The notes under the pieces are model-generated. The model worked only from the letters and a program-made list of their open reading frames with translations, made no database searches and was not told where the DNA came from. Position numbers and translations under genes: made by a program. From positions 66,526,001-66,590,000 of the forward strand of contig NC_043009.1 in NCBI RefSeq assembly GCF_006345805.1: a stretch of 64,000 nt of DNA, written 5' to 3'. Positions 520-63,449 of the stretch are shown piece by piece. How positions within the stretch are numbered: position 1 is the stretch's first letter; the number at the start of each line of letters is the position of its first letter. The DNA is from Octopus sinensis (lineage: Eukaryota).

Positions 520-816
520 TTATTCTTTTCTACTCTAGGCACAAGGCCCGAAATTTTGGTGGAGGGGGACCAGTCGATTAGATCGACCCCAGTACGCAAC
601 TGGTACTTAATTTATCGAACCCGAAAGGATGAAAGGCAAAGTCGACCTCGGCAGAATTTGAACTCAGAACGTAAAGACAGATGAAATACCTATTTCTTTA
701 CTGCCCACAAACGAGCTACACACAGAGGGGACAAACAAGGACAGACAAACAGATTAAGTCGATAACATCGACCACAGTGCGTAACTGGTACTTATTTAAT
801 CGACCCCGAAAGGATC
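520..816 (-). mobile_element. 5'-truncated Tx1-tailed unit (690-816) joined to a host SINE remainder (520-689)
   Basis: Minus-strand junction AAAGAAATAG|GTATTTCATC at 690/689. The host ends in its own tail CCCCCTCCACCAAAATTTCGGGCCTTGTGCCTAGAGTAGAAAAG. Confidence 0.85.
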
Positions 817-4710: not shown

Positions 4711-5070
4711 AGGCGGCGACATGGCAGAATTGTTTGCATGCCGGGCGAAATGCTTAGCGGTATTTCGTCTGCCGCTACGTTCTGAGTTCAAATTCTGCCG
4801 AGGTCGACTCTGCCTTTCATCCTTTCGGGGTCGATTAAATAAGTACCAGTTACGCACTGGGGTCGATGTAATCGACTTAATCCATGTGTCTGTCCTTGTT
4901 TGTCCCCTCTGTGTGTAGTAAAGAAATAAGTATTTTGTTCGTCTTTATGTTCTGAGTTCAAATTCCGCCGAGGTCGACTTTGTCTTTCATTCTTTCGGGA
5001 TCGATAAAATAAGTTCCAGTCGAGTACTGGGTTCGATATAATGACTTCCTCTCCCCTCAAAATCTGCTGC
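4711..5070 (+). mobile_element. Host SINE carrying an internal Tx1-tailed unit (4760-4929)
   Basis: Head 4711-4759, unit to AAGAAATAA, then GTATTTT.. restarts the SINE body, which ends in the non-Tx1 tail CCCCTCAAAAT. Confidence 0.85.
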
Positions 5071-5102
5071 TTTTATACCAAAATTGGCAGCCCTTAGCGC
5101 AG

Positions 5103-5620
5103 CAAAGGCGGCAAGCTGGCAGAATTTTTGTAACTCCAGGAAAAATGCCGCGTCCTTGTTATAAAAAGAATTACATTCTCGCGAGTAGAAAAGGCGGCAA
5201 AATAGCAGAATCGTTAATATGCCAGGCGAAATGCCGCTAAGCACTTTGTCTTCAAGTTCTGGGTTCAAATTTCGCCAAGTTCGACTTTACCTCCTATCCT
5301 TTCATGGTCGATAAATTAAGTACCAGTTGCGTACTGGGTCGATCTAATCGACTAGCCCCCTCCCCCCAAATTTCGACCCTTGTACTTAGAATAGAAAAGT
5401 ATATTTTCGAGTAGAAAAGGCGGCGAAATGGTCGAATCGTTGGCACGTTGGGCGAAATGCCGCGAAGCACTTTCTAATCATGTTCTGGCTCCAAATTCCG
5501 CCGAGGTCGATTTTTGCCTTCCATCCTTTCTGGTTCGACGAAATAAGAAGCAGCTGAGCGCTGGGGTCGGTGTAGTCGCCTTCCACCCCCGCCAAAATTT
5601 CAAGCCTTGTTCCAATAGTA
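5103..5620 (+). mobile_element. Head-to-tail cluster of older tRNA-derived SINE copies (GGCGGCG-headed family)
   Basis: Heads at ~5105, ~5190 and ~5418. B boxes GGTTCAAATTTC and GCTCCAAATTCC. Family tail CCCCC..AAATTTC..CCTTGT. Confidence 0.75.
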
Positions 5621-6389: not shown

Positions 6390-6927
6390 TGAGAGTTCAA
6401 ATTCCGCCGAGGTCGACTTTACCTCCCATCCTTTCATGGTCGATAAATTAAGTACCAGCTGCGTACTGGGTTCGATCTAATCGACTAGCCCCCTCCCCCC
6501 AAATTTCGGGACTTGTGCTTAGAATAGAAAAGTATATTTTCGAGTATAAAAGGCGGCGAAATGGTCGAATCGTTGGCACGCTGAGACCTCGACAAACTCA
6601 GCTTTACTTTGGGGATTCATTTTGGGATTCATAAAGTAAGAATCAGTCAGGTACGGGATCGAATTGATCGATTATCCAGTGTCACTAAAATTTATGACAT
6701 TGTGTGTATATTTAAAAAACAAACAATATTTTTTTTTCTACTATCGGAACAAGGTTGAAATTTTGAGGGGTGGGTGTTACCCGATTACATTGACCCCAAT
6801 ACTTAACCCCACAAAGAATGAAAAATAAATCGATCCCGGCAGAATTTGAACTGAGAACGTAAAGATGGATGAAACGCCGCTAAGCATTTTGTTCGGCGTG
6901 CTAACGATTCTGCCATAACGCCGCCTT
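6390..6927. mobile_element. Further copies of the GGCGGCG-headed SINE (6390-6590 plus, 6745-6927 minus)
   Basis: Same body and tail motifs. Additional copies at ~391-500 (+), ~3437-3660 (+) and ~37490-37685 (-). Confidence 0.75.
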
Positions 6928-6961
6928 CGTTTGCAACCAATATTATAATTAGGAAAATGGC

Positions 6962-7200
6962 AACCAGCTAGTAGAAATGTCATCATGCCGCACAAAATGC
7001 TTAGCGGTATTTCGTCTGCCGTTACGTTGTGAGTTCAAATTCCGCCTAGGCCGACTTTGCCTTTCATCCTTTCGGGGTCGATTAGATAAGTACCAGTTAC
7101 GCACTGGGATCGATATAATCGACTTAATCCGTTTGTCTGTCCTTGTTTGTCCCCTCTGTGTTTAGCCCCTTGTGGGTAGTAAAGAAATAGGTATTTCGTC
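6962..7200 (+). mobile_element. SINE head plus Tx1-tailed unit (7007-7190) followed again by GTATTTCGTC
   Basis: Junction AAAGAAATAG|GTATTTCGTC at 7190/7191. Confidence 0.85.
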
Positions 7201-7412
7201 GGTCTACATTATTTCAAAGAATGTATCTGTTACACCCAAAATGCTGATCACTGCAATGCAGTCTTCCTGTCACCAGATGAAACATCTTATAAGTAATATT
7301 TGAAATATATAACAGCACACTCTGTCTTCACACACATTGAGTACTTTTCCTTTTCATTTGCCAACATATTAGCTACATAAATAGGAATAGCTGCAGCGTT
7401 TGTGTGCGTGAG

Positions 7413-12499: not shown

Positions 12500-12852
12500 A
12501 TTCCTTCTCCTCAAGTCATACTAGGAGCAGCACGAAGGTCGGTTTCCCAGTTTCAATGGCGTATACATTCCCCACCTGGATGGGACACCGGTCCATCGCA
12601 GAATGATTCCTTCTCAAGCCATGCCAGGCACATGAGGGCCGCTTTCTTGGTTTCGGTGACGTATATATCTCCCACCTGAACGGAACACCGGTTCGTCGCA
12701 GGATTAATCATTTCTACCAGCTGCGTGGACTGGAGCAACGTAAAATTAAGTGTTTTGCTCAAGAGCACAACGTGTCGCCCAGTCCAGGAATCGAAAGCGC
12801 AGTCTTAGGATCATGAGTCCGACACCTTGACCATTAAGCCATGCGCCTCCAC
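12500..12852 (-). mobile_element. Third SINE type (GTGGAGGCGCATGGC head) with a duplicated central domain
   Basis: tRNA-like head and B box TTTCGATTCC. The motif CTGCGA..ACCGGTG.(C/T)CC.T.CAGGTGGG occurs twice. Related copies at ~2155-2437 (-), ~2550-2780 (+) and ~62420-62795 (-). Confidence 0.6.
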
Positions 12853-13387
12853 CAGCAAATGCAGTAGTAACAGAAGATATATTTATGATCAGATCTGGCA
12901 TCAAGAATGTAGACGGAGGGGGAGGACAATGAGTAATGAGGTTGGATTACGGAAGAAGGTGAGGGTAAGGAACGCGAAGTTAAGAGAAGAAAGTACGTAA
13001 AATGTCGAAAGGGGAGAAAAGGGTAATGGACGAAGAAGAAGAAAATGAAAGAAATGAATGAAAGAGAAATGAGAGAGTCATTGAGTTGGTGTGGGATGTT
13101 TGACATTCAGAATGGATAAACCACATAATGAAAAAATTAGAGAGCAGAGATCACTGGAAATCTCTTAAAAAGAACGAGAGAATGATATTCTAAAATAGTA
13201 CCCCAACGGTACATGAAGTGGTTCTGTAAATTGTTGGTGATCTTGTTTCGTATAAGTGTTTTGTATGTGTAACTATGAAAGGAACCAGGAAAACATACAT
13301 ATAGAAGAAAATATAAAAGTAATGAACAGACCAAAATGTGGTTCGGCAGGCAATATTTAAATGTGAATAGCGGTATTTAGCCTGAGA

Positions 13388-13615
13388 AGGCGGCGAGCTG
13401 GCAGAAACGTTAGCACGCCGGGCGAAATGCTTTGCGGTATTTCGTCTGCGTTACGTGTGAGTTCAAATTCCGCCGAGTCGACTTTGCCTTTCATCCTTTC
13501 GGGGTCGATAAATTAAGTAAGTTACGCACTGGGGTCGATGTAATCGACTTAATACCTATGTCTGTCCTTGTTTGTCCCCTCTGTGTTTAGCCCCTTGTGG
13601 GTAATAAAGAAATAG
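13388..13615 (+). mobile_element. Full-length chimeric Tx1-tailed SINE directly upstream of the Tx1
   Basis: A-box-like TGGCAGAAACGTTAG (13399-13413), B-box GAGTTCAAATTCC (13459-13471), and a tail ending AATAAAGAAATAG joined to GTATTTCGTC. Confidence 0.88.
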
Positions 13616-13796
13616 GTATTTCGTCTGTCGCACATGTGTTCGTGAAGTAAGAATTGCTGTTTCGTGGTGTTAATATTGTTAACAACTGTTGTTTCTTGTT
13701 AAACTGTTGAATAACTTAACTGTTGGAGTTTTCAATTGAAAACACTTAGTGCTTGTGGTAGCACGCGTTGTTCATTCCCCCTTTGGGGGGAAGAAT

Positions 13797-15325
13797 GTCG
13801 TCTAGCATGGAGCCTACCGTTGGAGCAGAAATACTTGTTTCTCCTGTTGAGAGGAGGAAATACATGTCCGGCGAGGAGCCAACTACAGACAAGGAAATAG
13901 GGGTTTCCCCCGCTACAAGAAGGAATAGCAGAGAGGATAATATATTTGATATTTTTGGAGATGTGTCTGAGAGCTCGTCAGAACTTTCACCAGAAGAGTT
14001 TCCGACTTTGCCCAGAGAACAAAGGCATTGTGTCGAAGAGAATAATTGATGTGCCTAGCATCCAGATAGAACCAAAAAATGGAAAAAAAAGTTTTGCGTT
14101 GGCTGCTGGGGGTGGAACCCAGATACTGTCGACGAATAAAAGCGAAATTATGAAATACAGCAAAATGATGGAAATAAATGACAACAGTGTGAAAATTGAA
14201 CCTCCGCAAAAGTTATTACAGGAAGAAAAGCAAAAAACAATAATTTTCAAAACATATTGTCTACAAAATAGAAAAATTGAAAGAAAGATGTCAGAAGAGA
14301 AAATAGAAAAGTGCTTAAAGCCAATATTGGGCGACGTAGTATTTCTGAGAAGAGGAAAAAATTCGGAACGGTGGAAGTAAGGTTCACCAATAAAGAAATA
14401 GCACACAAGAACTCAGTGGAAACGTTGAAAACGAACGACGTGGAGTTAATACCCTATTATATGGGGATGAGGACGTCGCGAATAAAAATTACAAGGGTCC
14501 CGCCAGAGGTCGAACCTATGTGGTTGTTGGCGGCAGTCCTAATCAAAGAGGTAGAAAAATTACTCTCCTCCAGGCTACCGCTACGGAAAACCCACGCTGG
14601 GATGGTAAAACAATTAATCTTCTCATTCAAGCGGACCCTAAAATAATTCAAACAATTCCTGAGACAATTGAGGTAGGGGAGGAGAACCTCGTGGTGTTTG
14701 TTGAGGGCCGAAAACCTCGATGTTTTTATGTGGTCAATTAGGCCACATTCGAAGGAACTGCAAGGAAAATGAAGAAGAGGAGGAAGAGGAGAAAAAAGAC
14801 AAAGAGGGAAGATAAAGAAGAGAAACAGATGAGAAAAAAACAACAAACAAAAGAAAAATACAACCAGCAACCCAGCCGAGAGCGGCGACTACTACAGAAC
14901 AACGACCAAAAAAGACTGCCAGAAGAAGAAAGAAAGAAAAAGGCATAATAGCCGTATACACTAAAGATACTGAGCTCATGAGAGACATTCAACTCATAAA
15001 GACTGTAAAAAAAATTGATAACCTTTCAGAGGAATTTATCAATTACGACATATATGAAGTCTCAAATAAGACTTATAGAATTCTACAAAATAAGTACAGA
15101 AAGACTATATCTTCATTGAGATTAGATTTTAACAAGTCGATATTTCATGGATTACCAGCTCCGATCCCGCGAGAAAAGGAAAAGGTGGAGATTCCCCCTC
15201 CACCTGATAATTCTGTGTCGGTGGTGAGACGGGATTTTGACAAATCTATTTCCCAAGACCGTCCACCTCCGACCCTGGATAAAAAAAAGGTGGAGGGTCC
15301 CCCTCCACCGGACAATCCTAATTAA
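13797..15325 (+). pseudogene. Tx1 ORF1 (gag-like nucleic-acid-binding protein), frameshifted
   Basis: Overlapping ORF pieces 13768-14049, 13946-14380, 14311-14646, 14520-14741 and 14978-15325. A zinc knuckle CF.CGQLGHIRRNC is read across a frameshift at ~14718-14762, followed by a charged low-complexity stretch and a Pro-rich end. Confidence 0.8.
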
Positions 15326-15336
15326 ACAGGTAAGTG

Positions 15337-18300
15337 ATGGCTATTCACATTGGTTGTTTAAATGTTCATGGCCTGTTGTCAAGCTGGAAGCAAGGACGCT
15401 TTCTGAATGACATCAGGTCGAGAAATTTGGATGTAATTGTTGCAACGGAAACCCGGGTGAAGGGGCCAAGAGATCTGCTCCCCCTCCTGAACGGCTACGA
15501 GAAATACGTTTCTCCGAGTCGGGCGGGAGGTGGGGGTGGGGTGTTGGTCCTACTAAAAAGAAACCGGGTAGCCGAGAAAAAGTTGGTTTTTCTGACCCAG
15601 AAGGCAGGCTGGTCGTTCTCGACTTGACATTCAGTTGTGGCAAGACAATCAGGCTGGTCGCTATTTATGCACCAAACATTATTGGCCCGCAAACTGAATA
15701 TTTTCGTGGCCTAGGAAAGTTCCTAGCCACGTCGCATTCACTAGTAGTGTTAGGAGACTCTAATACAATATGTGCAGCACACACAGATTGTGTTGGCTCA
15801 AACTCGAACATGAACAGAAAATGTAACACAGGCTTTCGGGATCTGCTAAGTCAATTTCAGCTAGCAGATCCATATAGGTTGGAGGAGCACCCGAACACTC
15901 CACAGTGGACGTGGTCAAATAGTGAGGGTCTACCAGAACATATCTAGATAGGATTTTAATTAGAGAAAAAGATAAGTCCATAGTTGAGTGTCCACAGTTT
16001 TTCTAGTCAGCTACAGTGACCACAAGATGGTTACCTGTAAACTGACGGTAGATAAGTTGCATAGACAGGGATCTGGCTACTGGAAACTCAATACGTCCCT
16101 TTTGGCGATTGAGGAGTACAGAAAGCGGATCAAGATGTTAATACAGAGGGCATTAACAGGTACCATCATTAATAACAAATGGTGGTACGCCCTAAAAAGA
16201 GCCATCAAATATGAGTCTATTAGGTTTAGCATAAGTTTAGCTAAGAAGGGACGTAAAATAGGAGATGGTCTAGTTAAGGAACTAGAAGAAGCCTGGAGGA
16301 CTGGTAATACAGACCAAGCGAGGGTGAAAAGACTGGAGTTAAACCAGCATCTTGAAGCCCACCACATGGGAAGTATTACCAGAGCTAAGTTACGTGCAAT
16401 GGGAAGTGAAGGAATCAAAGCCGCTGGATGGGCCCGAGTGGTGGAAGCTCGGCAAGGAAATAGTTCCTCTATTCGGTCTTTGACGAATCAAAATGGTGTC
16501 TTGATAAACGAACCCGAGAAAATGTGTGAGGTCTTTCGGGAGTACTTCGCCCAGCTGTTCGGGGGTGACGGCGGTCCTGGTGGTGGGAGAGCCCTCGAGG
16601 ACTTTCTTACCGGGCTGCCGTGCCTCTCGGGGTCGGATGCGGAGTCTTGCGAAGGGCCAATCACACTTGAGGAGGTGATGGAGGCTTTGGCCGATTGTAA
16701 AGCGGGTAAGTCACCGGGACTTGATGGTCTTCCGTACGAGCTGTATAAATGTATGCCAGACTTGTTCGGGCAACTACTGACTGACGTGTACGCGAACTGG
16801 AAACAGAATGGGTTATCCCCAGATCTGTGCGCCGGGGGAGTAGTGACGTTGGTCAGAAAGGACCCGGACAAGGGGGACGTTCTAGAGAATTTCAGGCCCA
16901 TCACTCTGTTAAACGCAGCAGAAGTGAAGATTTGGCCAAGGTTCTAGCAAAAAGGTTGGCGCGTGTCGCGAATGGTATAGTCGGGGAGGCACAGACATGT
17001 GCCATCCCAGGCAGAACCATTCAGGATACCCTCCATCTTATTCGCTATACCATAGAGAGGTTGGTAATAAATCTGGCAAAGGTGGGGCATTGGTGCATTT
17101 GGACCAGTCTAAAGCTTTTGATAGGGTTGACCATCGATACCTAGCGACTGTACTTGCGCGGTTTGGCCTGGGCCTTGGCTTCCTCAGGTGGTTTATCGCT
17201 TTGTACCACAACATTGACTCGATAGTTCGGGTGAACGGTTTCCTTTCGAAGCCGTTCTGCATCAGACGCTCGGTTCGTCAAGGATGTCCGCTTTCACCAC
17301 TTTTGTATGTGATGGCTCTCGAGCCATTACTGCAAAGGTTGAGTGGCATCCCGAGAGAACCAGGACTAGAGGAGTTTGTTACGGCTTTCGCGGATGATAT
17401 CACTATCAGTGTAACCACAGTGGTACGCCCTACGTGAAGTAGGTAAGACTATTGAGGCTTACGAGGAGGTAGCAGGAGCAAAGATTAACCGGGAAAAGTC
17501 GGTCGCTTGCAGCTCGGCACCTGGGTTGGCAAGTCGATGCCTTCAGACAGTGTTGTTAGGCGCTGGACGGAGGGACCGGTTAAGTTGCTGGGAGTCTGGT
17601 TTGGACCAGGCCTCCAGATAGAGAAGAACTGGACGGAGGTATTGAGCAGGGTGGCTGCAGTAGTCAAGACTTGGTCTTGGCGGTGGCTATCCCTGAAAGG
17701 GAGGGCGGAAGTGGCCAATGTGTTTATCGCATCGGTCATTACCTACCGCCTGACTGTCGTGCCCTGTCCGGATTCGTGGTGATCAGTTGGTGGAGAGACA
17801 GCTCTTTCGCTTTTGTGGAAGGGCAGGTCGCCACTTGTGAAACGCTCTGTCTGCTGTCAAAAGCCTTTAAATGGAGGTTTAGGGATGCCTTGGTTAATGA
17901 TGCGCAGACATGCGTTGAGGTTGAGGCACCTCTGGATTCTCCTGGATAGTGAACGGGTGTGGTCTCCGCTGGCCAGACAAATGTTCCCTGAGTTCAAGAG
18001 TTTTTGCGAACAGGAAGCCTGGTGTTCTCGTAGACCGAGGTCGAGTGTGAGTGGCATAAAGAGTGCCGTAAGGCCCTCTTGCTGTTCCGGCGCTCGGGCA
18101 ACGCCAGCGCGTGGTGGGGGTTCCACACGGATTTTATAGTGGGTTGGTAGAGTCTGAATGCGACGATGGCCTGGGGTCGACTCTAGGTCTCGGATTTATT
18201 CAACTGGACAGCTTGTTTCATCGTACATTCGGGTTGAGAACGTTGGACAACTTCCAAAAGTCCTTACCTGGCAATGCTACAGAGGTGCCTTGCCCGTTTG

Positions 18301-18740
18301 GGATAAGCTCGCAAGACATGGTAAACGTCAGTCGCCGACCTGTCCAAGATGCGGTGGGGACAGGGAAACCGTCCCTCACGCTATTGTTCAGTGTCCGGAG
18401 ATAACTGAAATGTGGGCTTATGCTGAACATCTGTTGTCCGGCGAAGGAAGAGTACGGCTGTCGACTGAGTCAATTAAAAAATTGACCACCGGGAGTTCTA
18501 ACGAACGAAGGTAAGAATTGTTTTCTCACGGTTGTAGCAATAGCAAAAGAGGCTGTATGGAATACTAGGATAAAAGGAATTAAGACAGGCAACTTTATCT
18601 CTGGTGACACATTTACGATCCTTTTTTTCTTTTCATTTGAAAAGGAAACTGTGGCTGGAGAAGAGGTGTCTGTCAGAGTGTACGTTCCAAAGAGATGGAA
18701 GTATGTTGCACGAGTGTTGTGCGTGCAAGGAACCGTGTGA
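15337..18740 (+). pseudogene. Tx1 ORF2 (APE endonuclease - reverse transcriptase - zinc finger), multiple frameshifts and stops
   Basis: MAIHIGCLNVHGL..DVIVATETRV, RLVAIYAPN, VVLGDSN, SDHKMV, GSGYWKLN, GKSPGLDGLPYELY, FRPITLLN, LDQSKAFDRVDHRYL, VRQGCPLSPLLY, AFADDITI, VKLLGVWF, GGLGMP and CPRCGGDRETVPHAIVQCP are spread over ORF fragments 15334-18514. Confidence 0.92.
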
Positions 18741-18990
18741 ATAGACGAGGAAAAAAAAAAAAAAAGGAAAAATAAAAAGGTATCAGCGGTAGATCGGGGC
18801 TTGTGGGATCGGAGCGTAACTTGATCATCGCTTCATTTGTATTGTTTTTGTACTGTGTATTCCATTCGATTTTTATGTATTGTATTTTATTTTTGATGTC
18901 ACAATTATGTAAAATCATATCGATTCACTGATCCCATCAGTTGTATTGTCCATATCTATGTTTGGCCCCCGGTGGGCAATAAAGAAATTG

Positions 18991-19236
18991 GTATTTCGTC
19001 TGCCGTTACGTTGTGAGTCCAAGTTCCGCCGAGGTCGACTTTACTTTTCATCCTTTCGGGGTCGATTAAATAAGTACCAGTTACGCACTGGGGTCGATAT
19101 AATCGACTTAATCTGTTTGTCTGTCCTTGTTTGTCCTCTTTGTATCTAACCCCTTGTAGGTAGTAAAGAAATAGGTATTTCGCCTGTCGCTACGTTCTGA
19201 GTTCAAATTCCACCGAGGTCGACTTTGCCTTTCATC
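18991..19236 (+). mobile_element. Headless Tx1-tailed SINE unit (18991-19174) followed by host SINE remainder
   Basis: The unit starts at GTATTTCGTC and ends AGTAAAGAAATAG, then GTATTTCGCCTGTCGCTACG.. resumes. Truncated by an oppositely oriented SINE head at ~19237. Confidence 0.85.
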
Positions 19237-19340
19237 CTATAGCAGAAGACTCTTGCCCAAAGTGCCATGCTGTGGGATTGAACCCGGAACCATGTTGTTG
19301 GAAAACAAGCTTCTTTCCACACATCATGCCTGCTACCTTG

Positions 19341-19427
<87 letters not shown>

Positions 19428-19510
19428 AAGAGGGAGAGAAAATGAGAGACAGAGAGTGGGAGAAAAATGACAGAGATGGATAGATTGGAAATAGAAAGAC
19501 AGACAGACAG

Positions 19511-19545
<35 letters not shown>

Positions 19546-19719
19546 CAGATAGATAGATAGATAGATAGATAAATAGAAAGATAGATAGACCATTCATAAT
19601 ATATAGATTCCGACATGGTGGTGATGGTAGCGATTGCAGTGGCGACGTGGGGTTGGGTTGGTGCCGGTGTTGATGGTCGCAATAGTTGTGTGCGTGCTGA
19701 GTGTTATTGGTTTCTTTGC

Positions 19720-19767
<48 letters not shown>

Positions 19768-19789
19768 ATTCTGTGACTGATTAACTGGT

Positions 19790-21370
19790 CAGGCGTGTAG
19801 AGTTGTTTTGTTGATTCTGTGCTGAAAGTGTTTCTTCTTCTGCGAGCGAGTGGTTGCGATTGGATATCGCACGTGACGACGATGGTAGGAACTGTGGCAG
19901 GGTGGTGGAGGGCGATGTTGGCGGCGGGGGCACGGCGGTGCTGGGGTTGGTGCCGGTCTCAGCTCAGTTTGTTGCAATGATGATGATGATGATGATGATG
20001 ATGATGGTGATTGTATTGTAGCATTGGTAGTGGTGCAGGTAATAAGTAGGGTGGTAGCGATGGTGAGTGTAGCCGTGGGGGGGATTAGAGGTGCTGTTGT
20101 TCCTATCAATTGTGGTGGTGGTGGTGGAGGAAATAATGCGCCATTGTTGGGGTGGCCGAATAGAGGGGGGAGTGATGGGACTAGAGGGGATGTTGATGAT
20201 AGCGTAGGGGGCTGTGGTACTATTAGCACTGGTTGTGGTGGTGGTAGTGGTGGTGGTGGTGGTGGTATTGATGGTGGTGGTCGTGGTGTGATATAGGTAG
20301 TAGTGGCGGTTGATGTAGGTGGTAGTTGTGGTTGTGGTTGTGGCTGTGACGGTAGGTGGGGTCGTTGTTTTGTGGTGGTGGTGATAATGGTGGAAGTGGT
20401 GATAGAGGTGGCGGTGCTGGTGACGTGATGATGATGATGATGATGATGTGAGGAGGAGGATGGTGATGATGGTGGTGATGGTGGTGTTGGCAGTGATAGT
20501 TGAGGTAGTAGTAGAGGTAGTGGTGGTGGTTGACATGACGGTGTAGTGGAGATGTCGGTGGTTGTACTGATAGCGAGGTCACGCTGCCTTTGACGCTGGT
20601 AGCGCCACTGGGGGCGGCAGTGGAGGCAAGTGGCGTCGGTGGCGCGGCTGTTGCCGCTGTCTGTTGTGACGACGATGGTGGTAGTGTTCTTGTGGTTATT
20701 GATAGAGCATCATTGTGATGGTGTCGGCGATGGTGACATTAACGGCGTCAGCGATGGTGGTCTCGTGTTCGGGGTGACGGTGACGGTGGTGATGCTGGTT
20801 GTGGTGGTGGTGGTGGTGGTGGTGGTGGTGGTGGTGTTGGTGGTTTTGGTGGTGGTGGTGGTAGTGATGGTTGTGGTGGTGGTGGTGGTGGTGATGATGG
20901 TTGTGGTGGTGGTGGTTGTGGTGATGATGGTTGTAGAGGTGGTGGTGGTGGTGGTGGTGGTGGTGGTGATGATGGTTGTGGTGGTGGTGATGATGGTTGC
21001 GGTGGTGGTGGCGATGATGGTTGTGGTGTGGTGGTGGTGGTGGTGATGATGGTTGCGGTGATAGTGGTGGTGGTGATGCTATTGTCTGTAATTGCAACGG
21101 ACGTTTCTTGTGGGGACATCGGTAGCGGTGGTGGTTCTGGTGAGGATGGTGGCTCTGATTACTGGTGGTTGGTATGGACGGACGGTGGCAGCGTTCGTGC
21201 TGTTGATGATGATCATGGTGCCGGCTGGCGTGGGAGCGGGGAGAGGATAGCTGGCGGCGTAGCGATGGAAGTTAACATTCTTTGAGATGGTAGTGATGGT
21301 GTTGGTTGTAGTTACCGGTGGTATGGAAGAGTATTGTGGGGGGTGGGGGTGGAGGGGCAGGGGGGGGGTT
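19790..21370 (+). repeat. (GGT/GAT)n-rich low-complexity region
   Basis: Trinucleotide-phased G/T-rich sequence. Its poly-V, poly-H, poly-T and poly-P ORFs are artefacts. Confidence 0.9.
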
Positions 21371-49431: not shown

Positions 49432-49510
49432 TTAACATAGAAACACTGAAATAGTAGATAATATTCTGCTTTCATGTGTCAGCTTTTCTCTCGTTATGTT
49501 TCGTGGATGC

Positions 49511-50050
49511 GGCTGGGTGCGGCTGGGTGCGGCTGGGTGCGGCTGGGTGAGGCTGGGTGCGGCTGGGTGCGGTTGGGTGAGGCTGGATGCGGCTGGGTGC
49601 GGCTGGGTGCGGCTGGGTGAGGCTGGGTGCGGCTGGGTGCGGTTGGGTGAGGCTGGATGCGGCTGGGTGCGGCTGGGTGCGGTTGGGTGAGGCTGGGTGC
49701 GGCTGGGTACGGCTGGGTGAGGCTGGGTGAGGCTGGGTGAGGCTAGGTGCGGATGGGTGCGGGTGGGTGCGGGTGGATGTGGCTGGGTGTCCCTAGGTGC
49801 GGCTGTGTGAGGCTGGGTGCGGCTGGGTGAGACTGGGTACGGCTAGGTGCGGCTGGGTACGGCTGGGTGTGGCTGGGTGAGGCTGGATGCGGCTGGGTGC
49901 GGCTGGGTGAGGCTGGGTGCGGTTGGATGCAGCTAGGTGCGGCTGGGTGAGGCTGGGTGCGGCTGGGTGCGGCTGGGTGCGGCTGGGTGCGGCTGGGTGA
50001 GGCTGGGTGCGGCTGGGTGCGGCTGGGGGTGGCTGGGAGCGGCTAGGTGT
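49511..50050 (+). repeat. Decamer minisatellite (GGCTGGGTG[C/A]) x54
   Basis: 54 consecutive 10-bp units stay in register, with substitutions only. Confidence 0.97.
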
Positions 50051-50099
50051 GGCAGTGATTTAGCCGTTGCAGAGGCATGAGTGGACGTGATGTGACCAC

Positions 50100-51300: not shown

Positions 51301-51438
51301 GAGATATGATATCGTGTCTAGATGTGTAATGAGTTGAAGTTGCATAATCCCACATCAAGCTGATTGAGATCTCTAACCAAAGACATTCCACCTGTGGCTG
51401 TTCCGTCTTATTTTTTGTTAATGGTATTGAATATCAAA

Positions 51439-51640
51439 AGGCGGCGAGCTGGCAGAAACGTTAGCATGCAGGGCGAAATGAGTAGCCGATTTCGTCTGCC
51501 GAGTCGACTTTGCCTTTTATCCTTTCGGGGTCAATTAAATAAGTACCAGTTACGCACTGGGGTCGACATAATCGACTTAATCCGTCAGTCTGTCCTTTTT
51601 GCTCCCTCTGTTTAGTCCCTTGTGGGTAGTAAAGAAATAA
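51439..51640 (+). mobile_element. Full-length chimeric SINE (tRNA-like head + body + Tx1-like 3' tail) with a 15-bp TSD
   Basis: Head AGGCGGCGAGCTGGCAGAAACGTTAG and tail ..CCCTTGTGGGTAGTAAAGAAATAA. Exact flanking repeat GTATTGAATATCAAA at 51424-51438 and 51641-51655. An internal deletion between two GCCG motifs removes the B box. Confidence 0.9.
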
Positions 51641-52010
51641 GTATTGAATATCAAATTTTATGCACCGTATCTATTTTAGAACCGTGTGAGCTGTTTTGTT
51701 ATCGTGCGTAGAGAGATAAAAACTTTTCTTTTATGCAATATCTTTGTGAACTGAGAGGGATAAACGGAACCCATTTCAACCTTTGAGTTCGAATCTTATA
51801 AGCGACAGAACACTCTAAATAACACCCATAGAAATACCTTTTTGCTGAAGCTATTTTCAATAAGAGTTGTAGAAAATTGACTGAACCGATGAGCATAACG
51901 AAACGCGTTCTGTGAAATCAGTCTGAATAATAAATCATTACTTTATTATCACTGTTTGCTTTGACTCAACGATGTTCTAAAGAATGAAGTTCGTGTGTGT
52001 GTGTGTGTGT

Positions 52011-56362: not shown

Positions 56363-56435
<73 letters not shown>

Positions 56436-56544
56436 CAGACAGACATACAGACAGTCAAGCAGGCAGGCAGAAAGACTGACAGACAGACAGATAGACTGAC
56501 AGACAGACAGATAGATAGTTAGATTGACAGACAAACAGACAGCC

Positions 56545-56605
<61 letters not shown>

Positions 56606-56606
<1 letters not shown>

Positions 56607-58455
56607 GTTTCTTTATTGGCCACACAGGGCTGCACACAGATGGGACAAGTTACAAGGTAGAGCTTTTCTTTTGGGGGATGAAGAGAACAAAAAGCAAAAG
56701 AAAAAAAAAGGAAGGTGGCGTAGGTTTTCGATCAAGAGATATCGTAAAAGGGAAGAAAAGAACAAAAACAAAAATAAAAATTGAATAAAATAAAAAGAAT
56801 AAAAAGAAAAAAAAGGGAAAAGGAAAAGGAACAAAAGGTAAGAGAAATGAAAAAAGAAGAAAAAAGGGGAAAAAAGGGGAAGAGGGAAAACAAGAACGAT
56901 CAATAGGGATCGTGTATCACAGTGTTATGATATATGGTGTAAAGGGGAAAGCAAGTAAGGTTTATCCGTGGGAAGAAAAGCCTACGAAAAAGACCACGGT
57001 AACCTTGGTCAATATTGTTATATGTTACCACATTTGTTTGCAAGTGGGTAACCCTCTGTTTTCAATTTCTGGGTTCATAGGATTATGCTCAAGGTGGCTT
57101 CGTCATTCATACGTGCCATCCTTGCTACATTCACCCATCTTTTTTTAAAACATTCGCTAGACAAAACTTGCCTCTCTACTCTCACTTTCCTTTTCAAGTG
57201 GTACTTGAAGAAGTTGATGAGAGATTGACCAGAGAGGAAAGTGTTTGTCTCCAATCCTTTCAGACGCGTCCACCAGATACATTCTTTCGCCATAGCCACA
57301 AGGATGATGAAAATAGCTCTTCCTTCCCGTTTGAAGGAAGGAGGCGTGACAATATTGACGATAGACTCAGCTGATAAACCGACTCGTCCCACACGTGACA
57401 GCAGTTGTTCGACATAAGCCCACAGGTCGGAAATTGTTGGACACTGCACGAGTGCGTGCAGAACGGTTTCGTCGCTCTGCCCGCATCTCGGGCAGGTCGG
57501 CCCCGTGTTTCTCGAGCCGTGTCTGTAGAGCTTATCCCGAACGGGTAGCGCTTCTCGGTAGCACTGCCAGGCCAGGGATCTCTGGAAGTTGTCCATGGGC
57601 CCTGGCCCGAAAGTCGTCCTGAACAGGCGGGTCAGGTACTCCTCGTCGACGTCCAGGTTCGCCCCGAGCTCGTCGTCGTACCTCCCCTCCACTAATCCCC
57701 TATAGAATGCTTTGGTTGTGTTGAAGTCACTCAAGGTCGATCCGGGACGGCAGAGTTGCTTGAGAGCAACGCGACACTCGCGGTGCCAATCGCCCTTCCT
57801 CGGCCTCTTTTTGATCCACGACTGCAGTTCGGTCATGGAGACGAGCTGCGGGAAAGCGTGCCTCACAAACGGCGTCCACACCTGTTCACCGTCGTCTACA
57901 TAGAGCCAGAGATGTCGCAGTCTCAGCGCGTGTCTGCGCATCATCAACCACGGCATGCCCAGCCCTCCTTTTAGCGGGTGTTGACAGCAAATGGATCGCC
58001 TGACCATCGGGATGCATCCTTTTCACAAGAAGCGAATGAAAATGCGTTCTAGTTTGGTGATGGTAGGGTCGGGACAAGGCACGACAGTCAGGCGGTAGTA
58101 GATGACGGACGCGATTTCGCCACCTCCACCCGACCTTTTCGGGGTAGTTTCCTCTCGGCCCATTGCCGGGCGAGTGTGTCACCCTACTCGTTATCTCGTT
58201 CCAGTTCTTCTCCACTTGGAGGTCCGGACCAAACCAGACCCCGAGCAACTCAACCGGGCCGTCGGTCCAGCGTCCCACGACGGAGGCGCTGGTGGACGGC
58301 ATGGGCTTGCTTCTCCAGGTGCCTAGTCGCAAGCCCACTGACTTTTCCCGGTTGATTTTCGCTCCTGTCACCGATTCGTAGTTTTTCAGTGTCTCACCGA
58401 CCTGCTCGATGTGCTCGTGGCTAGACACTATGACGGTGACGTCGTCCGCGTATGC

Positions 58456-58456
<1 letters not shown>
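56606..58456 (-). mobile_element. 5'-truncated Tx1-type LINE (copy A) inserted in a (GATA)n/(TATC)n tract
   Basis: ORFs 57886-58428 and 57075-58007 encode the RT C-terminus from [27 protein letters not shown] and CPRCGQSDETVLHALVQCP. 3' tail GTGTGGCCAATAAAGAAACT. (TATC)n on both sides. Confidence 0.93.
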
Positions 58457-58538
<82 letters not shown>

Positions 58539-58675
58539 CAGACAGGCTGGCAGGCAGGCAGACAAACTGACAGACAGATAGACAGAGAGACAGACAGACA
58601 GACAGATAGATTGACAGACAGACAGATAGATAGTTAGATAGACAGACATACAGGTAGACAGACAGACAGACAGAC

Positions 58676-58756
<81 letters not shown>

Positions 58757-58859
58757 TACAGACAGTCAAGCAGGCAGGCAGGCAGAAAGACTGACAGGCA
58801 GACAGATAGACTGACAGACAGACAGATAGATAGTTAGATAGACAGACAAACAGACAGAC

Positions 58860-58916
<57 letters not shown>

Positions 58917-60071
58917 TGTTTCTTTATTGGCCACACAGGGCTGAACACAGAGGGGGCAAAATACAAAGTAGAGCTTTCTGTTAGGGAAAAGAAGAAAGAA
59001 AAAAAAAGTGGGATTAGAAACTCGATCAAAAGGGATCATGGAAAAAAAAATTCGATGAATAGGGATCGTGTATCACACAAATGTCATAATGTAAAACGAG
59101 GAAAGAGATAATCCGTGGGAAGAAAAGCCTACAGAAAAGACTACGGTAACCTTGGGCAATAGTGTCATGCAAAAAGAAAACACATTACAGTAAGTGGCTC
59201 TCTTTTTTACTTTCTTTTTCTTTTTTTTTTTTGGTTCATAGGATTATGCTCAAGCTGGCTCCGTCATTCGCACGTGCCATCCTAGCTACATTCACCAATC
59301 TTGTTTTGAAAAGTTCATTAGACAAAACTTGCCTCTCTACTCTCACCTTCCTCTTCAAGTTGATGAGAGATTGGCCAGAGAGAGGAAAGTATCTCTAGTC
59401 CTTTCAGACGCGTCCACCATACACATTCATTCGCCGTAGCCACAATTACGATGAAAATGGCTCTTCCTTCCCGTTTCAAGGAAGGAGGCGCAACAATATT
59501 CATGATAGACTCGGTTGATAAACTGACTCGTCGCACACTCGATAGCAGTCGTTCGACATCGGCCCACAGGTCGGAAATGGTTGGACACTGTATGAGTGCG
59601 TGCAGAACGGTGTCATCGCTCTGACTACATCTCGGACAGGTCGGTCCCGTGTTTCTCGAGCCATGCCTGTAGTGCTTATCCCGAACGAGTAGCGCTTCTC
59701 GATGGCACTACCCGGCCAGGAATCTCTGGAAGTTGTCCATAGGTCCCGGCCTAAAAGTCGTCTTGAACAGGCGGGTCAGATATTCCTCGTCGACGCACAG
59801 GACGCCTCGAGATTGTCGTCGTGCCTCCCCTCCACTAATCCCCTATAGAATGCTTTGGTTGTGTTGAAATCACTCAAGGTCGACCCGTGACAGCATAGTT
59901 TCTTGAGAGCAACGCGACACTCGCGGTGCCATTCGCTCTTCCTCGGCCTCTATTTAATCCGCGAATGCAGTTCGGTCGTGGAGACGAGCTGCGGGAAAGC
60001 GCACCTCACAAACGGCGACCATACCCGTTCACCGTCGTCTACGTAGAGCCGGAGATGTCACAGTCTCAGCG
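58917..60071 (-). mobile_element. 5'-truncated, degraded Tx1-type LINE (copy B) with its 3' end in (TATC)n
   Basis: Homologous to copy A from RLRHL through the zinc finger region (ORF 59318-59536 RRVSLSTESIMNIVAPPSLKREGRAIF). 3' tail GTGTGGCCAATAAAGAAACA abuts (TATC)n at 58916. Confidence 0.9.
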
Positions 60072-61065: not shown

Positions 61066-61583
61066 ATATTATATATATATATATATATATGTTAAAAGGA
61101 AGTCACTAAAATATCTATTTTCACAAAACATAGATTGTTTATTTTGTTCTATGGTTATGAAATATGGCCATTAATATTCAAAACAGTTGAAGTGGTTCCA
61201 CCATATGCGTGTTTACCATTCTTTTTTCTTTTATATACAACCATACGCCACCCCCACCGCACCCACTTATCGCGTTTCAGTAGCGTCACGTTTCAGGAAT
61301 AGCTTGCCACAACATCAAATTCCGTAACGTGAATTATGCTATTCGTTGATTTCCGTATTTTTCCGGCTTCCACGTATCATCAAAATCAATAGGAAAATTC
61401 CAAAAGAACCTCTTGAAAAGCCTTTAAATCAGATCTGAAAAAGGCAAGGTAATATTGAAAGTGAAAGTTGTGAAGATGGAGTAACATTAAACACAAAGTG
61501 TCGAAACATGGTGACAGGAAGCGTTTTAAAGAGGCAAAACTGGAACATGTGGCTAGCAAAAGTAACCGTATGGATCTATTATC

Positions 61584-61957
61584 TATTTCTTTATTGTCCA
61601 CAGGGGGCTAAACATGGAGGGGAGAAACAATGACAGATAAAGGGATTATGTTGATTACATCGACCCCAGTGCGTATCTGGTACTTATTTAATCGACCCCA
61701 GAAGGATGAAAGGCAAAGTCGACTTCGGCGGAATTTGAGCTCATAACGTAGCGGCAGAGGAAATACCTATATTTTTACAACCCACAAGGGGCTAAACACA
61801 GAGAGGACAAACAAGGATAGGCAAACGGATTAAGTCGATTATATCGACCCCAGTGCTTGACTGGTACTTATTTAATCGACCCCGAAGGGATGAAAGGCAA
61901 AGTCGACCTCGGCGGAATTTGAGCTCAGAACGTAGCGGCATGCTCACGTTTCTGCCA
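61584..61957 (-). mobile_element. Nested dimer of Tx1-tailed SINE
   Basis: Internal junction AAAAATATAG|GTATTTCCTC at 61767/61766. The outer boundaries are flanked by GATAA(C/T)AGATC (61958-61968 and 61573-61583). Confidence 0.85.
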
Positions 61958-63449
61958 GATCTGTTATCTTTTACTTGCTTCAGTCATTGGACTGCGGCCA
62001 TGCTGGGGCATTATCTCGAAGGGGTTCAGCCACACAAATCTACTCCAATGTTTGTTTATAAGTTTGGTACTTATTCTATCAAACTCTTTTGCTGAAGCGA
62101 TAAGTTGCAGGGACATAAAGAAGCCAACACCGGTTGTCAAGTGGTGGGGCGAGGGCTGACACAACCAGTATTATACATACATACACGCACTCGCACTTAT
62201 ATGTGGGTCAATATTAGTCTGAAAAGATATATGTACGCATTCACCATCCATTGACAAAATTCTGCATGGCATTTAATCGAAAGGAGATATACCCATACAT
62301 ACACAAATCTACGATTATATATATATATGTGTGTGTATGTTTGTGTACGTGTGTTTGTATGCGTGTGTCTATGTGTGTGTGTGTATGTGTTTGTGTGTTT
62401 GTGTAACAATACGTACACAGTTTTAAGTTTAGTATTTATTCTATCTTCTCAACACTGGTTGTCGAGAGGTAAGAGACAAATTAGAGCATACCCTTCGGTC
62501 ATGAATGACCATGGGATTGCACCTAGAAAGTTCCCCTCCGAGACACAAGTCTGGGCAATGTTGTTTATGGAAGACCAGCAGTCGCCCATTCATATCACTC
62601 ATGTTATCTGAGGGAAAGGCAAAAGGGCCGATACAGCTTGGCACCAGTGACGTTGCAACTCATTTCTACAGCTGAGTGAACTGGAGTAACGTGAAATAAA
62701 GATGTTTTGCTCAAGAACACAACACGCAGCCCGGTCCAGGAATCGAACTCACAACCTCACGATCATAAACTCGACCATCTAACCACTGAGCCATAAAACA
62801 AATACAAGCACAAAATCCCACATACACATGCACACATACTTAGATACATATAAACACGTATATTTACATATACAGCTACACATATCAAACATAAACACAC
62901 ATGCATACGCACACCTGATTGTCAGATTTTACCGTTTCACATCTTCAGTTTACTGAGAGCAACTCCTTTTATTCGAAGGTGACATATTATTCTTATGCAG
63001 ACAATTCCTGTAAATTATTGAAAGTGTTTTACACATATTTCATACGCAGTTTACGTTCAACAAGCAAATATCTCTGGAAAAGAAATCTATATGTAATTAA
63101 TTCAAAAAATACACATATTTGATTTTTTTTTCAGTCTTTTTAACTTACATATAGAATTCAATCACAAAAATAAAAAGTTTCTTGGTTGAAATCAATAAAT
63201 AAAAACAACAAAACACTAAAAAGAAAAAAATGGTGGTACAAGTGATTTTGTTGGATTTGCAGTTTTTATTCAGAAATGGATCAAAATTTAGCTGCTTTAC
63301 CTTCTTCTTGCTTCTAAACAATTAATCACAGCCATTACTGGTATGCTGGCTTACATTCTTCGTTTAGAATTTAGGTTGTTATATGGAAGTCGTGCTAAAG
63401 CTTGTGTTATTTCACTAAAGCTTTTTAGATAAGATCACATCCTGTCTAT

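What the first reader, a model, noticed from the sequence alone, without database searches (positions are those of the whole stretch)
13373..19236. Candidate new system: a Tx1 LINE that homes into a SINE, with a chimeric SINE that uses the LINE tail and targets itself
Seen: the full-length Tx1 (13631-18990) is flanked by a 15-bp duplication GTATTTCGTCTG(T/C)CG. That sequence lies between the A box and B box of the GGCGGCG-headed tRNA-derived SINE. On both sides of the LINE are SINE units whose last ~45 nt (TTGTCCCCTCTGTGTTTAGCCCCTTGTGGGTARTAAAGAAATAG) match the LINE's own 3' end (TTGTCCATATCTATGTTTGGCCCCCGGTGGGCAATAAAGAAATTG), and each is again joined to GTATTTCG. A further target-like 15-mer (aaatg..tagcg|GTATTTAGCCTGAGA, 13373-13387) precedes the first SINE head, so the locus looks like a stack of 3-4 insertions at one site. 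Established: Tx1-clade APE elements include sequence-specific families (Tx1L/Tx2L into other repeats, Keno into U2, Mutsu into 5S, Dewa into tRNA arrays, Kibi/Koshi into microsatellites), and SINEs are mobilised by LINEs that share their 3' tail. Inference: the LINE uses an abundant SINE as a safe-haven target, and a SINE derivative that captured its tail carries its own target site. This gives self-nesting amplification. I know of no description of this exact pairing but cannot search.
Basis: partly seen in the sequence, partly recalled or inferred. Interest (0 to 1): 0.9.

Follow-up and report, generated by a model that had tools for sequence, protein, structure and literature searches.

The report
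Site-specific LINE with self-targeting partner SINE
A dead but complete jumping gene (a Tx1-like LINE) sits at one precise spot inside a short repeat (SINE) that shares its tail, and SINE copies have landed at that same spot in each other to build head-to-tail stacks; this is a neat variant of a known behaviour of these elements, not a new kind of system.

Summary
A 5,360-bp L1/Tx1-type LINE (13631-18990) has ORF1 with a CCHC knuckle, an endonuclease, RT and zf-RVT, but many frameshifts and stops. It is flanked by a 15-bp duplication, GTATTTCGTCTG(T/C)CG, which is positions 50-64 of a GGCGGCG-headed SINE. A SINE subfamily ("type 2") ends in a ~48-nt tail about 80% identical to the LINE tail. 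Of 9 such tails in the window, 7 are followed by SINE position 50 onward and 8 by GTATT. One solo SINE has a perfect 15-bp duplication, GTATTGAATATCAAA, at a non-SINE site.

Neighbouring units in a stack are no more alike than units at different loci. Two stacks join a type-2 unit to a unit with a different tail. Both facts favour repeated site-specific insertion over local duplication.

Limits: there is only one LINE copy. The tail matches a second, (TATC)n-targeting Tx1 family in the window just as well. Specificity is not absolute. No other genome sequence was reachable.

Crocodilian Tx1-Mar/SINEU (Kojima 2015) already shows a Tx1 LINE and partner SINEs sharing a transposon target with tandem insertions. 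What is new here is that the target lies inside the partner SINE itself. Verdict: new variant of a known kind, moderate interest.

The parts
13359..13372 (+). Remnant of the head of an older, outer target SINE ('X'): AAATGTGAATAGCG, matching SINE positions 37-49
   Evidence: Local alignment of 13280-13387 to the SINE head scores 28; 0/500 shuffles and 1/1000 genomic windows reach it
13373..13387 (+). Left copy of the outer target-site duplication, GTATTTAGCCTGAGA (first 12 nt are 11/12 identical to the right copy at 19175-19186)
   Evidence: It shares the GCCTG variant with 19175-19189; the other copies read GTCTG
13388..13436 (+). Head (H) of a full-length type-2 SINE, with an A-box-like TGGCAGAAACG and the 5' arm of the hairpin
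13437..13615 (+). Body and tail of the type-2 SINE unit 'Ba', ending ...GCCCCTTGTGGGTAATAAAGAAATAG
13616..13630 (+). Left copy of the LINE target-site duplication, GTATTTCGTCTGTCG (SINE positions 50-64 of unit Bb)
13631..18990 (+). LINE-A, an L1/Tx1-type non-LTR retrotransposon. 5'UTR 13631-13794; ORF1 from ATG 13795 with a CCHC knuckle near 14715-14760; ORF2 15337-18514 (endonuclease, RT, zf-RVT); 3'UTR 18515-18990 ending ...GGCCCCCGGTGGGCAATAAAGAAATTG. Complete in architecture but inactivated by frameshifts and stops
18991..19174 (+). Type-2 SINE unit 'Bb' (positions 50 to the end). Its first 15 nt, GTATTTCGTCTGCCG, are the right copy of the LINE duplication
19175..19238 (+). Rest of the outer target SINE X (positions 50 to ~112). 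Its first 15 nt, GTATTTCGCCTGTCG, are the right copy of the outer duplication. It is cut off at 19238 against an inverted, unrelated SINE
51424..51655 (+). Solo type-2 SINE (51439-51640) at a non-SINE site, with a perfect 15-bp duplication GTATTGAATATCAAA (51424-51438 and 51641-51655)
61583..61962 (-). Type-2 dimer: a 5'-truncated head lacking the hairpin plus body (61962-61767), then a body starting at position 50 (61766-61583). It is flanked by a ~11-bp duplication GATAA(C/T)AGATC (one mismatch) at a non-GTATT site, so it moved as a unit
   Evidence: (TRF period 184)
4711..5110 (+). Hybrid stack: type-2 head, body and tail (4711-4928), followed from 4929 (GTATTTTGTTCGTCT) by a SINE body that carries a type-1-like tail
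520..815 (-). Hybrid stack: a type-2 unit 5'-truncated at about position 106 (815-691), followed from 689 (GTATTTCATCTGTCT) by a SINE body with the type-1 tail ...TAGAGTAGAAAAGAATA
6954..7207 (+). Full type-2 SINE (6954-7190), followed by an orphan 17 nt, GTATTTCGTCGGTCTAC, and then unrelated DNA

Best explanation
LINE-A is a target-specific L1/Tx1-type retrotransposon. Its endonuclease nicks the bottom strand just 5' of GTATTTCGTCTG. On the top strand this reads ...G|GTATTTCGTCTGCCG|TTACG. The second nick falls 15 bp downstream, which gives a 15-bp duplication. This sequence is positions 50-64 of a family of GGCGGCG-headed SINEs.

One SINE subfamily (type 2) replaced its original tail with the ~48-nt tail shared by the local Tx1 lineage. 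The LINE's reverse transcriptase therefore copies it in trans, and it lands at the same site. Because the site lies inside the SINE, type-2 copies insert into each other and into the parental subfamily.

The 5' end of a new copy is joined in one of two ways:
- as a full-length copy with a visible duplication (the outer event at 13373/19175);
- more often by annealing at the 15 nt that the cDNA and the cut target share. This hides the duplication and leaves head-body-body stacks whose internal junction is always tail|GTATTTCG.

Such stacks have no internal run of four T. They can therefore be transcribed from the first head and moved again as multimers.

Shown: the anatomy, the duplications, the recurrent junction, the hybrid stacks, and the lack of extra similarity between neighbouring units. 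Inferred: which protein does the nicking, trans-mobilisation by this LINE family, and homology-guided 5' joining.
For: 1. The LINE has a 14/15 duplication exactly at SINE positions 50-64.
2. Of the 9 Tx1-type tails belonging to type-2 SINEs or LINE-A, 7 are followed by SINE position 50 onward and 8 by GTATT. The junction 21-mer occurs 6 times against 0.00 expected.
3. The solo SINE at 51439-51640 has a perfect 15-bp duplication that starts with GTATT. This is the same length and the same first bases as the LINE's duplication.
4. By my count, about 5 of 10 SINE-context sites are occupied by independent events, against 1 of 38 other GGTATT sites. Fisher p = 8e-4. Recognition therefore extends beyond the hexamer.
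5. Neighbouring units are no more alike than units at different loci. Ba-Bb is 90% and D1-D2 is 85%, whereas Ba-C and Ba-B are 94%. There is also no first-unit versus second-unit pattern. This argues against both local duplication and a dimeric master copy.
6. Two stacks join a type-2 unit to a body with the type-1 tail. These are insertions into another subfamily.
7. Two of the three headless type-2 units start at exactly position 50.
8. The tails are shared: 38/48 identities, 0 of 1000 shuffles.
9. A sister Tx1 family in the same window sits twice in (TATC)n with the same kind of tail. Target specificity therefore runs in this lineage, as it does in the Tx1 clade generally (Kojima 2015, PMC4494074).
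Against: - There is only one LINE-A copy, and it is inactive.
- All evidence comes from one 64-kb window. Scans of the metagenome, prokaryotic-genome and viral collections and of the protein collections found no other copies.
- The SINE tail is slightly closer to the (TATC)n-targeting family's tails (scores 45-49) than to LINE-A's (42).
- Some tail-to-position-50 junctions may be inherited rather than new, because the dimer at 61583-61962 moved as a unit to an unrelated site.
- Two tails are followed by only 15-20 nt of target-like sequence (7191-7207; 520-503 on the minus strand), which the model does not predict.
- The unit at 815-691 has no head or duplication upstream.
Confidence: 0.7

Rival explanations
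1. Short-motif preference only. The endonuclease recognises little more than G|GTATT, much as L1 recognises TT|AAAA. SINE hits are then frequent simply because the SINE is abundant and carries the motif, the way Alu accumulates in the A-rich parts of other Alus. There would be no real homing into the SINE.
For: The solo SINE at 51439-51640 used a non-SINE site that shares only GTATT with the SINE site. The dimer at 61583-61962 used an unrelated site. The upstream context varies: head ...TAGCG| in some cases and tail ...AATAG| in others.
Against: The window has 48 GGTATT sites. Of the 38 outside SINE context, only 1 carries an insertion, against about half of the SINE-context sites (p = 8e-4). 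The outer target at 13359-13387 matches the SINE over 25 nt, not just 6.
Confidence: 0.15
2. The body-body stacks are local tandem duplications, unequal crossovers, or copies of one dimeric or multimeric master SINE. The LINE then happened to land at a junction, and the SINE does not target itself.
For: TRF reports the dimer at 61598-61940 as a 184-bp tandem repeat. That dimer has its own flanking duplication, so multimers do move as units.
Against: Neighbouring units are as diverged as unlinked copies and show no position-specific similarity. Hybrid type-2/type-1 stacks exist. The stack junction coincides to the base with the start of the LINE's duplication and with the GTATT start of the solo SINE's duplication. 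Creating a tail|position-50 junction in the first place already needs an insertion at that site.
Confidence: 0.08
3. Carried-along flank. GTATTTCGTCTG... after the tail is read-through sequence that belongs to the RNA (3' transduction from a master copy), or the whole head-body-LINE-body block moved as one composite transcript into the outer SINE.
For: Orphan 15-20-nt target-like pieces follow tails at 7191-7207 and at 520-503 on the minus strand. The outer duplication (13373-13387 and 19175-19189) brackets the entire SINE-LINE-SINE block.
Against: The solo SINE at 51439-51640 ends at ...AAGAAATAA and runs directly into its own duplication, with no carried GTATTTCG. The 15-mer also stands before the LINE's 5' end, which only a target duplication explains. 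A 5.8-kb composite could not be a Pol III transcript.
Confidence: 0.05

Closest known systems
Tx1-Mar LINEs and SINEU-1/2/3 SINEs of crocodilians (Kojima 2015, Genome Biol Evol, PMC4494074)
   Same: Both involve a Tx1-type LINE and its non-autonomous SINE partners that share a preference for one defined site in an abundant transposon family. Both have a ~16-bp duplication, tandem SINE insertions at the same site, and partly relaxed specificity (13-90% of copies on target).
   Different: In crocodilians the target is a Mariner DNA transposon, unrelated to the SINE. Tandem copies there sandwich a visible duplication. Here the target lies inside the partner SINE and its parent subfamily, so the SINE is its own landing pad. 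Most internal junctions show no separate duplication. The SINE heads also differ: GGCGGCG-headed with Pol III-type boxes here, snRNA-derived there.
Tx1L inserted in Tx1D, and Tx2L in Tx2D, of Xenopus laevis (Christensen et al. 2000, as cited in PMC4494074)
   Same: An APE-encoding LINE with ORF1 and ORF2 inserts at one sequence within another repeated mobile element, creating composite elements.
   Different: The Xenopus target is a piggyBac-type DNA transposon, and no tail-sharing SINE that carries the target is described. Endonuclease specificity was shown biochemically for Tx1L, but not here.
Kibi and Koshi (microsatellite-targeting Tx1) and Dewa (tRNA-array-targeting Tx1) (Kojima and Fujiwara 2004, as cited in PMC4494074; the Dewa target is from my own knowledge)
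   Same: LINE-B in this window behaves like Kibi and Koshi: two copies end directly in (TATC)n. LINE-A's target lies in the part of the SINE that carries Pol III-type boxes, which recalls Dewa.
   Different: The repeat unit differs, (TATC)n versus (TC)n and (TTC)n. LINE-A's target is a SINE body, not a tRNA gene, and no tRNA model matches it.
Human L1 and Alu
   Same: A LINE mobilises a SINE in trans. The SINE carries sequences the endonuclease likes (A-rich linker and tail), so Alus accumulate in and next to Alus. 5' ends are joined by microhomology. (All from established knowledge.)
   Different: L1 recognition goes through poly(A), not a specific tail. Its target is a loose TT|AAAA, with no fixed position and no regular head-to-tail register.

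Membership tests
APE-type non-LTR retrotransposon (LINE) of the L1/Tx1 group | ORF2 with an N-terminal apurinic-type endonuclease, a reverse transcriptase and a C-terminal zinc-binding domain, with ORF1 upstream | tested here: met
   Pfam RVT_1 1.3e-16 and zf-RVT 2e-9. Residues 5-692 of the stitched ORF2 query align with human L1 ORF2p (E 7e-47), and residues 5-234 align with L1 endonuclease structures. ORF1 has a CX2CX4HX4C knuckle read across a frameshift.
Tx1 clade specifically (as opposed to L1 proper) | RT-domain phylogeny places the element with Tx1L, Keno, Mutsu, Kibi and Koshi rather than with L1 | tested here: inconclusive
   No reference Tx1 sequences were available. The best named relative is 'Transposon TX1 uncharacterized 149 kDa protein' of Stylophora (30% identity, 282 bits), compared with 163 bits to human L1 ORF2p. 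Octopus genomes are annotated with L1-Tx1 families (PMC13282606). This is suggestive only.
Target-specific non-LTR retrotransposon (criterion of Kojima 2015: one sequence type in >20% of flanks) | Independent copies flanked by the same target sequence at the same position | tested here: inconclusive
   Only one LINE-A copy is present, and it is on target with a 15-bp duplication. For its presumed SINE passengers, 6 of 8 tails are on target. Genome-wide counts were not possible.
SINE-LINE partnership through a shared 3' tail (Ohshima/Okada 'common tail' type) | The 3' end of the SINE is homologous to the 3' end of the LINE | tested here: met
   38/48 identities with LINE-A, and 0 of 1000 shuffles reach the score. 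The match is not exclusive, because the LINE-B tails score 45-49.
SINE-LINE partnership through a shared 3' tail | A conserved tail stem-loop recognised by the RT | tested here: inconclusive
   A 4-bp GCCC/GGGY stem is paired in 89% of cells but exceeds the shuffles in no measure. The RNAalifold consensus energy is only -0.7 kcal/mol.
SINE-LINE partnership through a shared 3' tail | Trans-mobilisation demonstrated experimentally | not testable with these tools
   This needs a retrotransposition assay.
tRNA-derived SINE (SINE2) | The head is recognisably derived from a tRNA, with internal Pol III A and B boxes | tested here: inconclusive
   A-box-like TGGCAGAAACG and B-box-like GAGTTCAAATTCC are present, and the 5' GGCGG can pair with CCGCC. 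However, Rfam (E up to 1) and ARAGORN find no tRNA.

The most novel reading that the evidence does not exclude
A LINE/SINE pair in which the endonuclease's target is part of the SINE's own body. Each SINE copy is then both passenger and landing pad. Homology between the incoming cDNA and the cut target resolves the 5' end in register, so retrotransposition alone builds regular head-to-tail arrays. This would be a direct, recombination-independent route from an interspersed SINE to a satellite-like tandem repeat. It would also be the first SINE-targeting Tx1 family.
Probability: 0.4. Interest if true: 0.65.

Novelty: new variant of a known kind. Interest (0 to 1): 0.5.

Why it matters
Target-specific LINEs are studied both as models of how endonucleases choose DNA and as leads for site-directed gene insertion. 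Each new, well-defined 15-20-bp target adds a natural specificity to compare.

A SINE that carries its partner's target would be a clean natural example of self-nesting amplification. It would offer a mechanism for turning dispersed repeats into tandem arrays without unequal crossing-over. That bears on how SINE-derived satellites arise, and on why SINEs make up such a large share of octopus-type genomes (11.6% in O. vulgaris, PMC13282606).

It also matters for repeat annotation. Body-body stacks would be mis-called as new 'dimeric' families or as tandem repeats.

Tried and rejected
1. More copies elsewhere. DNA pattern scans of metagenome contigs, prokaryotic genome contigs and viral contigs gave nothing or chance hits. 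L004 and L009 were read and rejected.

2. Protein route. Two homology searches gave at best 56-63% identity. Their contigs (L001-L003, L005-L008) lack the SINE and mostly lack the tail. Only L008 ends in a similar ...GTGGCCAAT tail. An exact look-up of a window ORF found no record.

3. tRNA origin of the head. Rfam at E up to 1, Rfam gathering on the whole window, and ARAGORN all returned nothing.

4. A conserved tail hairpin. It is not supported beyond chance.

5. Local duplication as the source of the stacks. Rejected on pairwise identities.

6. Dimeric master copy. Rejected for lack of position-specific similarity. Multimers do move, however (61583-61962).

7. Literature. No paper in the searchable library describes a SINE-targeting Tx1, a self-targeting SINE or these sequences. 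Repbase and Dfam could not be consulted.

8. Source organism. An octopus-like cephalopod is my recollection of the SINE and the microsatellite-rich context. It was not verified.
Full report
**What is at the locus**

Reading 12800-14000 and 18700-19900 and checking coordinates gives this order on the + strand:

| Coordinates | Feature |
|---|---|
| 13359-13372 | AAATGTGAATAGCG, remnant of an older SINE head |
| 13373-13387 | GTATTTAGCCTGAGA |
| 13388-13436 | SINE head, AGGCGGCGAGCTGGCAGAAACG... |
| 13437-13615 | SINE body and tail (unit Ba), ending ...GCCCCTTGTGGGTAATAAAGAAATAG |
| 13616-13630 | GTATTTCGTCTGTCG |
| 13631-18990 | the LINE, ending ...GGCCCCCGGTGGGCAATAAAGAAATTG |
| 18991-19174 | SINE body and tail from GTATTTCGTCTGCCG onward (unit Bb) |
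| 19175-19238 | a third SINE body from GTATTTCGCCTGTCG onward, cut at 19238 by an inverted, unrelated SINE |

- Numbering the copy at 13388-13615 as 1-228, the 15-mer is positions 50-64.
- It lies between an A-box-like and a B-box-like motif. It forms the 3' arm of a 13-bp hairpin whose 5' arm is ...GGGCGAAATGC in the head.

**The LINE**

- The element is 5,360 bp. It has a 164-nt leader and an ORF1 starting at 13795, with a CX2CX4HX4C knuckle that is legible only across a frameshift.
- ORF2 (15337-18514) is followed by a 476-nt 3' UTR.
- Pfam finds RVT_1 (1.3e-16) and zf-RVT (2e-9).
- A stitched ORF2 aligns from the endonuclease through the RT with human L1 ORF2p (E 7e-47) and with L1 endonuclease crystal structures.
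- The best named relative in 5.8 billion proteins is a coral protein called 'Transposon TX1 149 kDa protein' (30% identity). The closest unnamed relative is 56% identical.
- It is therefore an L1/Tx1-group element. The assignment to Tx1 rather than L1 is plausible but was not tested by phylogeny.
- The copy is dead, with at least five frame changes and six or more in-frame stops in ORF2.

**SINE subfamilies**

BLAST of the copy at 13388-13615 against the window, followed by reading the loci, separates two groups.
- 'Type 2' copies align over the full 228 nt. Eight units carry the type-2 tail.
- 'Type 1' copies align only to about position 163 and end in a different tail (...CCAAAATTTCGGGCCTTGTGCCTAGAGTAGAAAAGAATA).
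- One type-1 variant is 89% identical to type 2 over positions 49-162 and carries the same GTATTTC... site (689-572, minus strand).
- Type 2 is therefore a chimera: the head and core of that SINE, plus a new tail.

**The tail**

- The type-2 tail matches the LINE-A tail at 38 of 48 aligned positions (score 42). None of 1000 shuffles reach this score.
- It matches the tails of a second Tx1-like family (LINE-B) slightly better, with scores of 45 and 49.
- LINE-B is present as two 5'-truncated copies on the minus strand (56608-58473 and 58919 to about 60036). Each ends ...GCCCTGTGTGGCCAATAAAGAAAC and runs directly into (TATC)n.
- The tail is therefore a property of the lineage, not of LINE-A alone.
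- Two things tie type 2 to a LINE-A-like driver. The last bases agree (AAATAG and AAATTG, against AAAC in LINE-B), and the target is the same.
- A small GCCC/GGGY stem in the tail is usually pairable but not beyond chance.

**Recurrence of the junction**

- The 21-mer spanning tail and target (up to 3 mismatches) occurs six times against 0.00 expected.
- Counting all nine tails of type-2 SINEs plus LINE-A, seven are followed by SINE position 50 onward. These junctions are at 689 (minus strand), 4929, 7191, 13616, 18991, 19175 and 61766 (minus strand).
- An eighth tail, on the solo SINE at 51439-51640, is followed by GTATTGAATATCAAA. This is a perfect 15-bp duplication of the sequence before its head.
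- It has the same length and the same first five bases as the LINE's duplication, but at a non-SINE site.
- The ninth tail (61583, minus strand) closes a head-body-body dimer flanked by a ~11-bp duplication GATAA(C/T)AGATC. That dimer therefore moved as one unit to an unrelated site.

**Is the SINE context preferred, or only GGTATT?**

- The window has 48 GGTATT sites. Ten of these are in SINE context.
- Taking a conservative five independent occupied sites out of about ten in SINE context, against one occupied out of 38 elsewhere, gives Fisher p = 8e-4. The counts are mine.
- The outer target at 13359-13384 resembles the SINE over 25 nt spanning the nick (0 of 500 shuffles).
- Recognition therefore reaches beyond the hexamer, although it is not absolute.

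**Insertion or duplication?**

- Neighbouring units are no more similar than unlinked ones. Ba-Bb is 90% and D1-D2 is 85%, while Ba is 94% identical to the units at 7007 and at 4760.
- First units do not resemble first units more than they resemble second units.
- Two stacks are hybrids, with a type-2 unit followed by a body carrying a type-1 tail (815-520 on the minus strand; 4711 to about 5110).
- Two of the three headless type-2 units begin exactly at position 50.
- These facts fit repeated insertion at one site. They fit poorly with unequal crossing-over or with a single dimeric master copy.

**History of the main locus (inferred)**

1. An older SINE X, itself 5'-truncated at about position 37, received a full-length type-2 copy or dimer at position 50. 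This left the duplication GTATTTAGCCTG(AGA) / GTATTTCGCCTG(TCG). The two copies share a GCCTG variant that the other units lack.
2. The Ba|Bb junction arose either in the source copy or by a further insertion.
3. LINE-A then inserted at the Ba|Bb junction with a 14/15 duplication.

**Mechanism proposed**

- The bottom-strand nick falls just 5' of GTATTT, and reverse transcription is primed from that nick on an RNA bearing the Tx1-type tail.
- The top-strand nick falls 15 bp downstream.
- When the RNA is itself a SINE, the growing cDNA comes to contain the complement of positions 50-64. The free top-strand end (...GTATTTCGTCTGCCG-3') can anneal to it.
- The new copy is then joined in register, the head is not duplicated, and no separate duplication is visible. 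This is microhomology-mediated 5' joining, as known for L1 (from established knowledge), using 15 nt.
- The steps from 'which protein nicks' onward are inference.

**Comparison with what is known**

- Many Tx1-clade families are target-specific. Known targets are DNA transposons, LTR elements, U2, U5, 5S, satellites and microsatellites (Kojima 2015, PMC4494074).
- That paper also shows Tx1-Mar LINEs and SINEU SINEs sharing a site in Mariner-N4_AMi, a ~16-bp duplication, tandem SINE insertions, and on-target fractions of 13-90%.
- The present case works the same way. It differs in that the target is a SINE, namely the partner itself and its parent subfamily. This makes the system self-nesting and gives in-register arrays.
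- I found no description of this in the searchable literature. Recent octopus repeat surveys list L1-Tx1 and SINE families but not their targets (PMC13282606, PMC8967140).
- Repbase and Dfam could not be checked.

**Verdict**

- It is best filed as a new variant of a known kind: target-specific Tx1 plus co-targeted SINE.
- The main weakness is sample size, with one LINE copy and one window.
- Interest is moderate (0.5). It is a tidy natural experiment in endonuclease specificity and in array formation, but a mobile-element specialist would not find it very surprising.

**Unexplained**

- Orphan 15-20-nt target-like pieces follow tails at 7191-7207 and at 520-503 (minus strand).
- The truncated unit at 815-691 has no head or duplication upstream (note).

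Noticed in passing
window 56363-60036 (minus strand): A second Tx1-like family (LINE-B, about 46% amino-acid identity to LINE-A in the RT C-terminal region) is present as two 5'-truncated copies in tandem: 56608-58473 and 58919 to about 60036. Each ends ...GCCCTGTGTGGCCAATAAAGAAAC and runs directly into (TATC)n (56363-56605 and 58456-58916). It looks like a microsatellite-targeting relative, in the manner of Kibi and Koshi.
   Followed up: partly
window 7191-7207; 520-503 (minus strand): After one type-2 tail and one type-1 tail there are only 15-20 nt resembling SINE positions 46-66 (GTATTTCGTCGGTCTAC; ACGTTATTTTGTCTGTCTTT). Unrelated or inverted DNA follows. These may be 3' read-through carried along from a source copy, or target SINEs cut by deletion or inversion.
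   Followed up: partly
window 61930-61962 (minus strand); 51487-51510: The head of the dimer at 61962 lacks exactly the predicted hairpin (SINE positions ~34-62), deleted between two GCCG repeats. The solo copy at 51439 lacks positions ~64-91, also between GCCG repeats. Both are short-direct-repeat deletions within SINE copies.
   Followed up: no
window ~5353-5440 and ~6486-6560: The same junction between a type-1 tail and the next SINE head (...TAGAATAGAAAAGTATATTTTCGAGTA(G/T)AAAAGGCGGCGAAATGGTCGAATCG) occurs at two places. Either type-1 SINEs also travel as dimers, or a local segment was duplicated.
   Followed up: no
window 19239-19345: A different SINE with a tRNA-like B box (GGTTCCGGGTTCAATCCCA on the minus strand) abuts and truncates the outer target SINE at 19238. 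Another tRNA-like fragment in reverse orientation lies at 12800-12857.
   Followed up: no
window 49504-50053; 20230-21075: There is a 10-bp minisatellite, TGGGTGCGGC, with 55 copies, and very long (GGT)n/(TGG)n tracts. The window as a whole is extremely rich in di-, tri- and tetranucleotide repeats (80 TRF rows), including seven (AGAT)n-type (AGAT/ATAG/TAGA) arrays, of which only two carry a LINE-B.
   Followed up: no
L008 1700-1781 (ENA ERZ25513664): A 47%-identical relative of the LINE-A C-terminus ends ...CTCTTGTGGCCAAT, followed by CAACACACACATC at the contig end. The tail motif is similar, and the target may be a (CA)n-like repeat.
   Followed up: no
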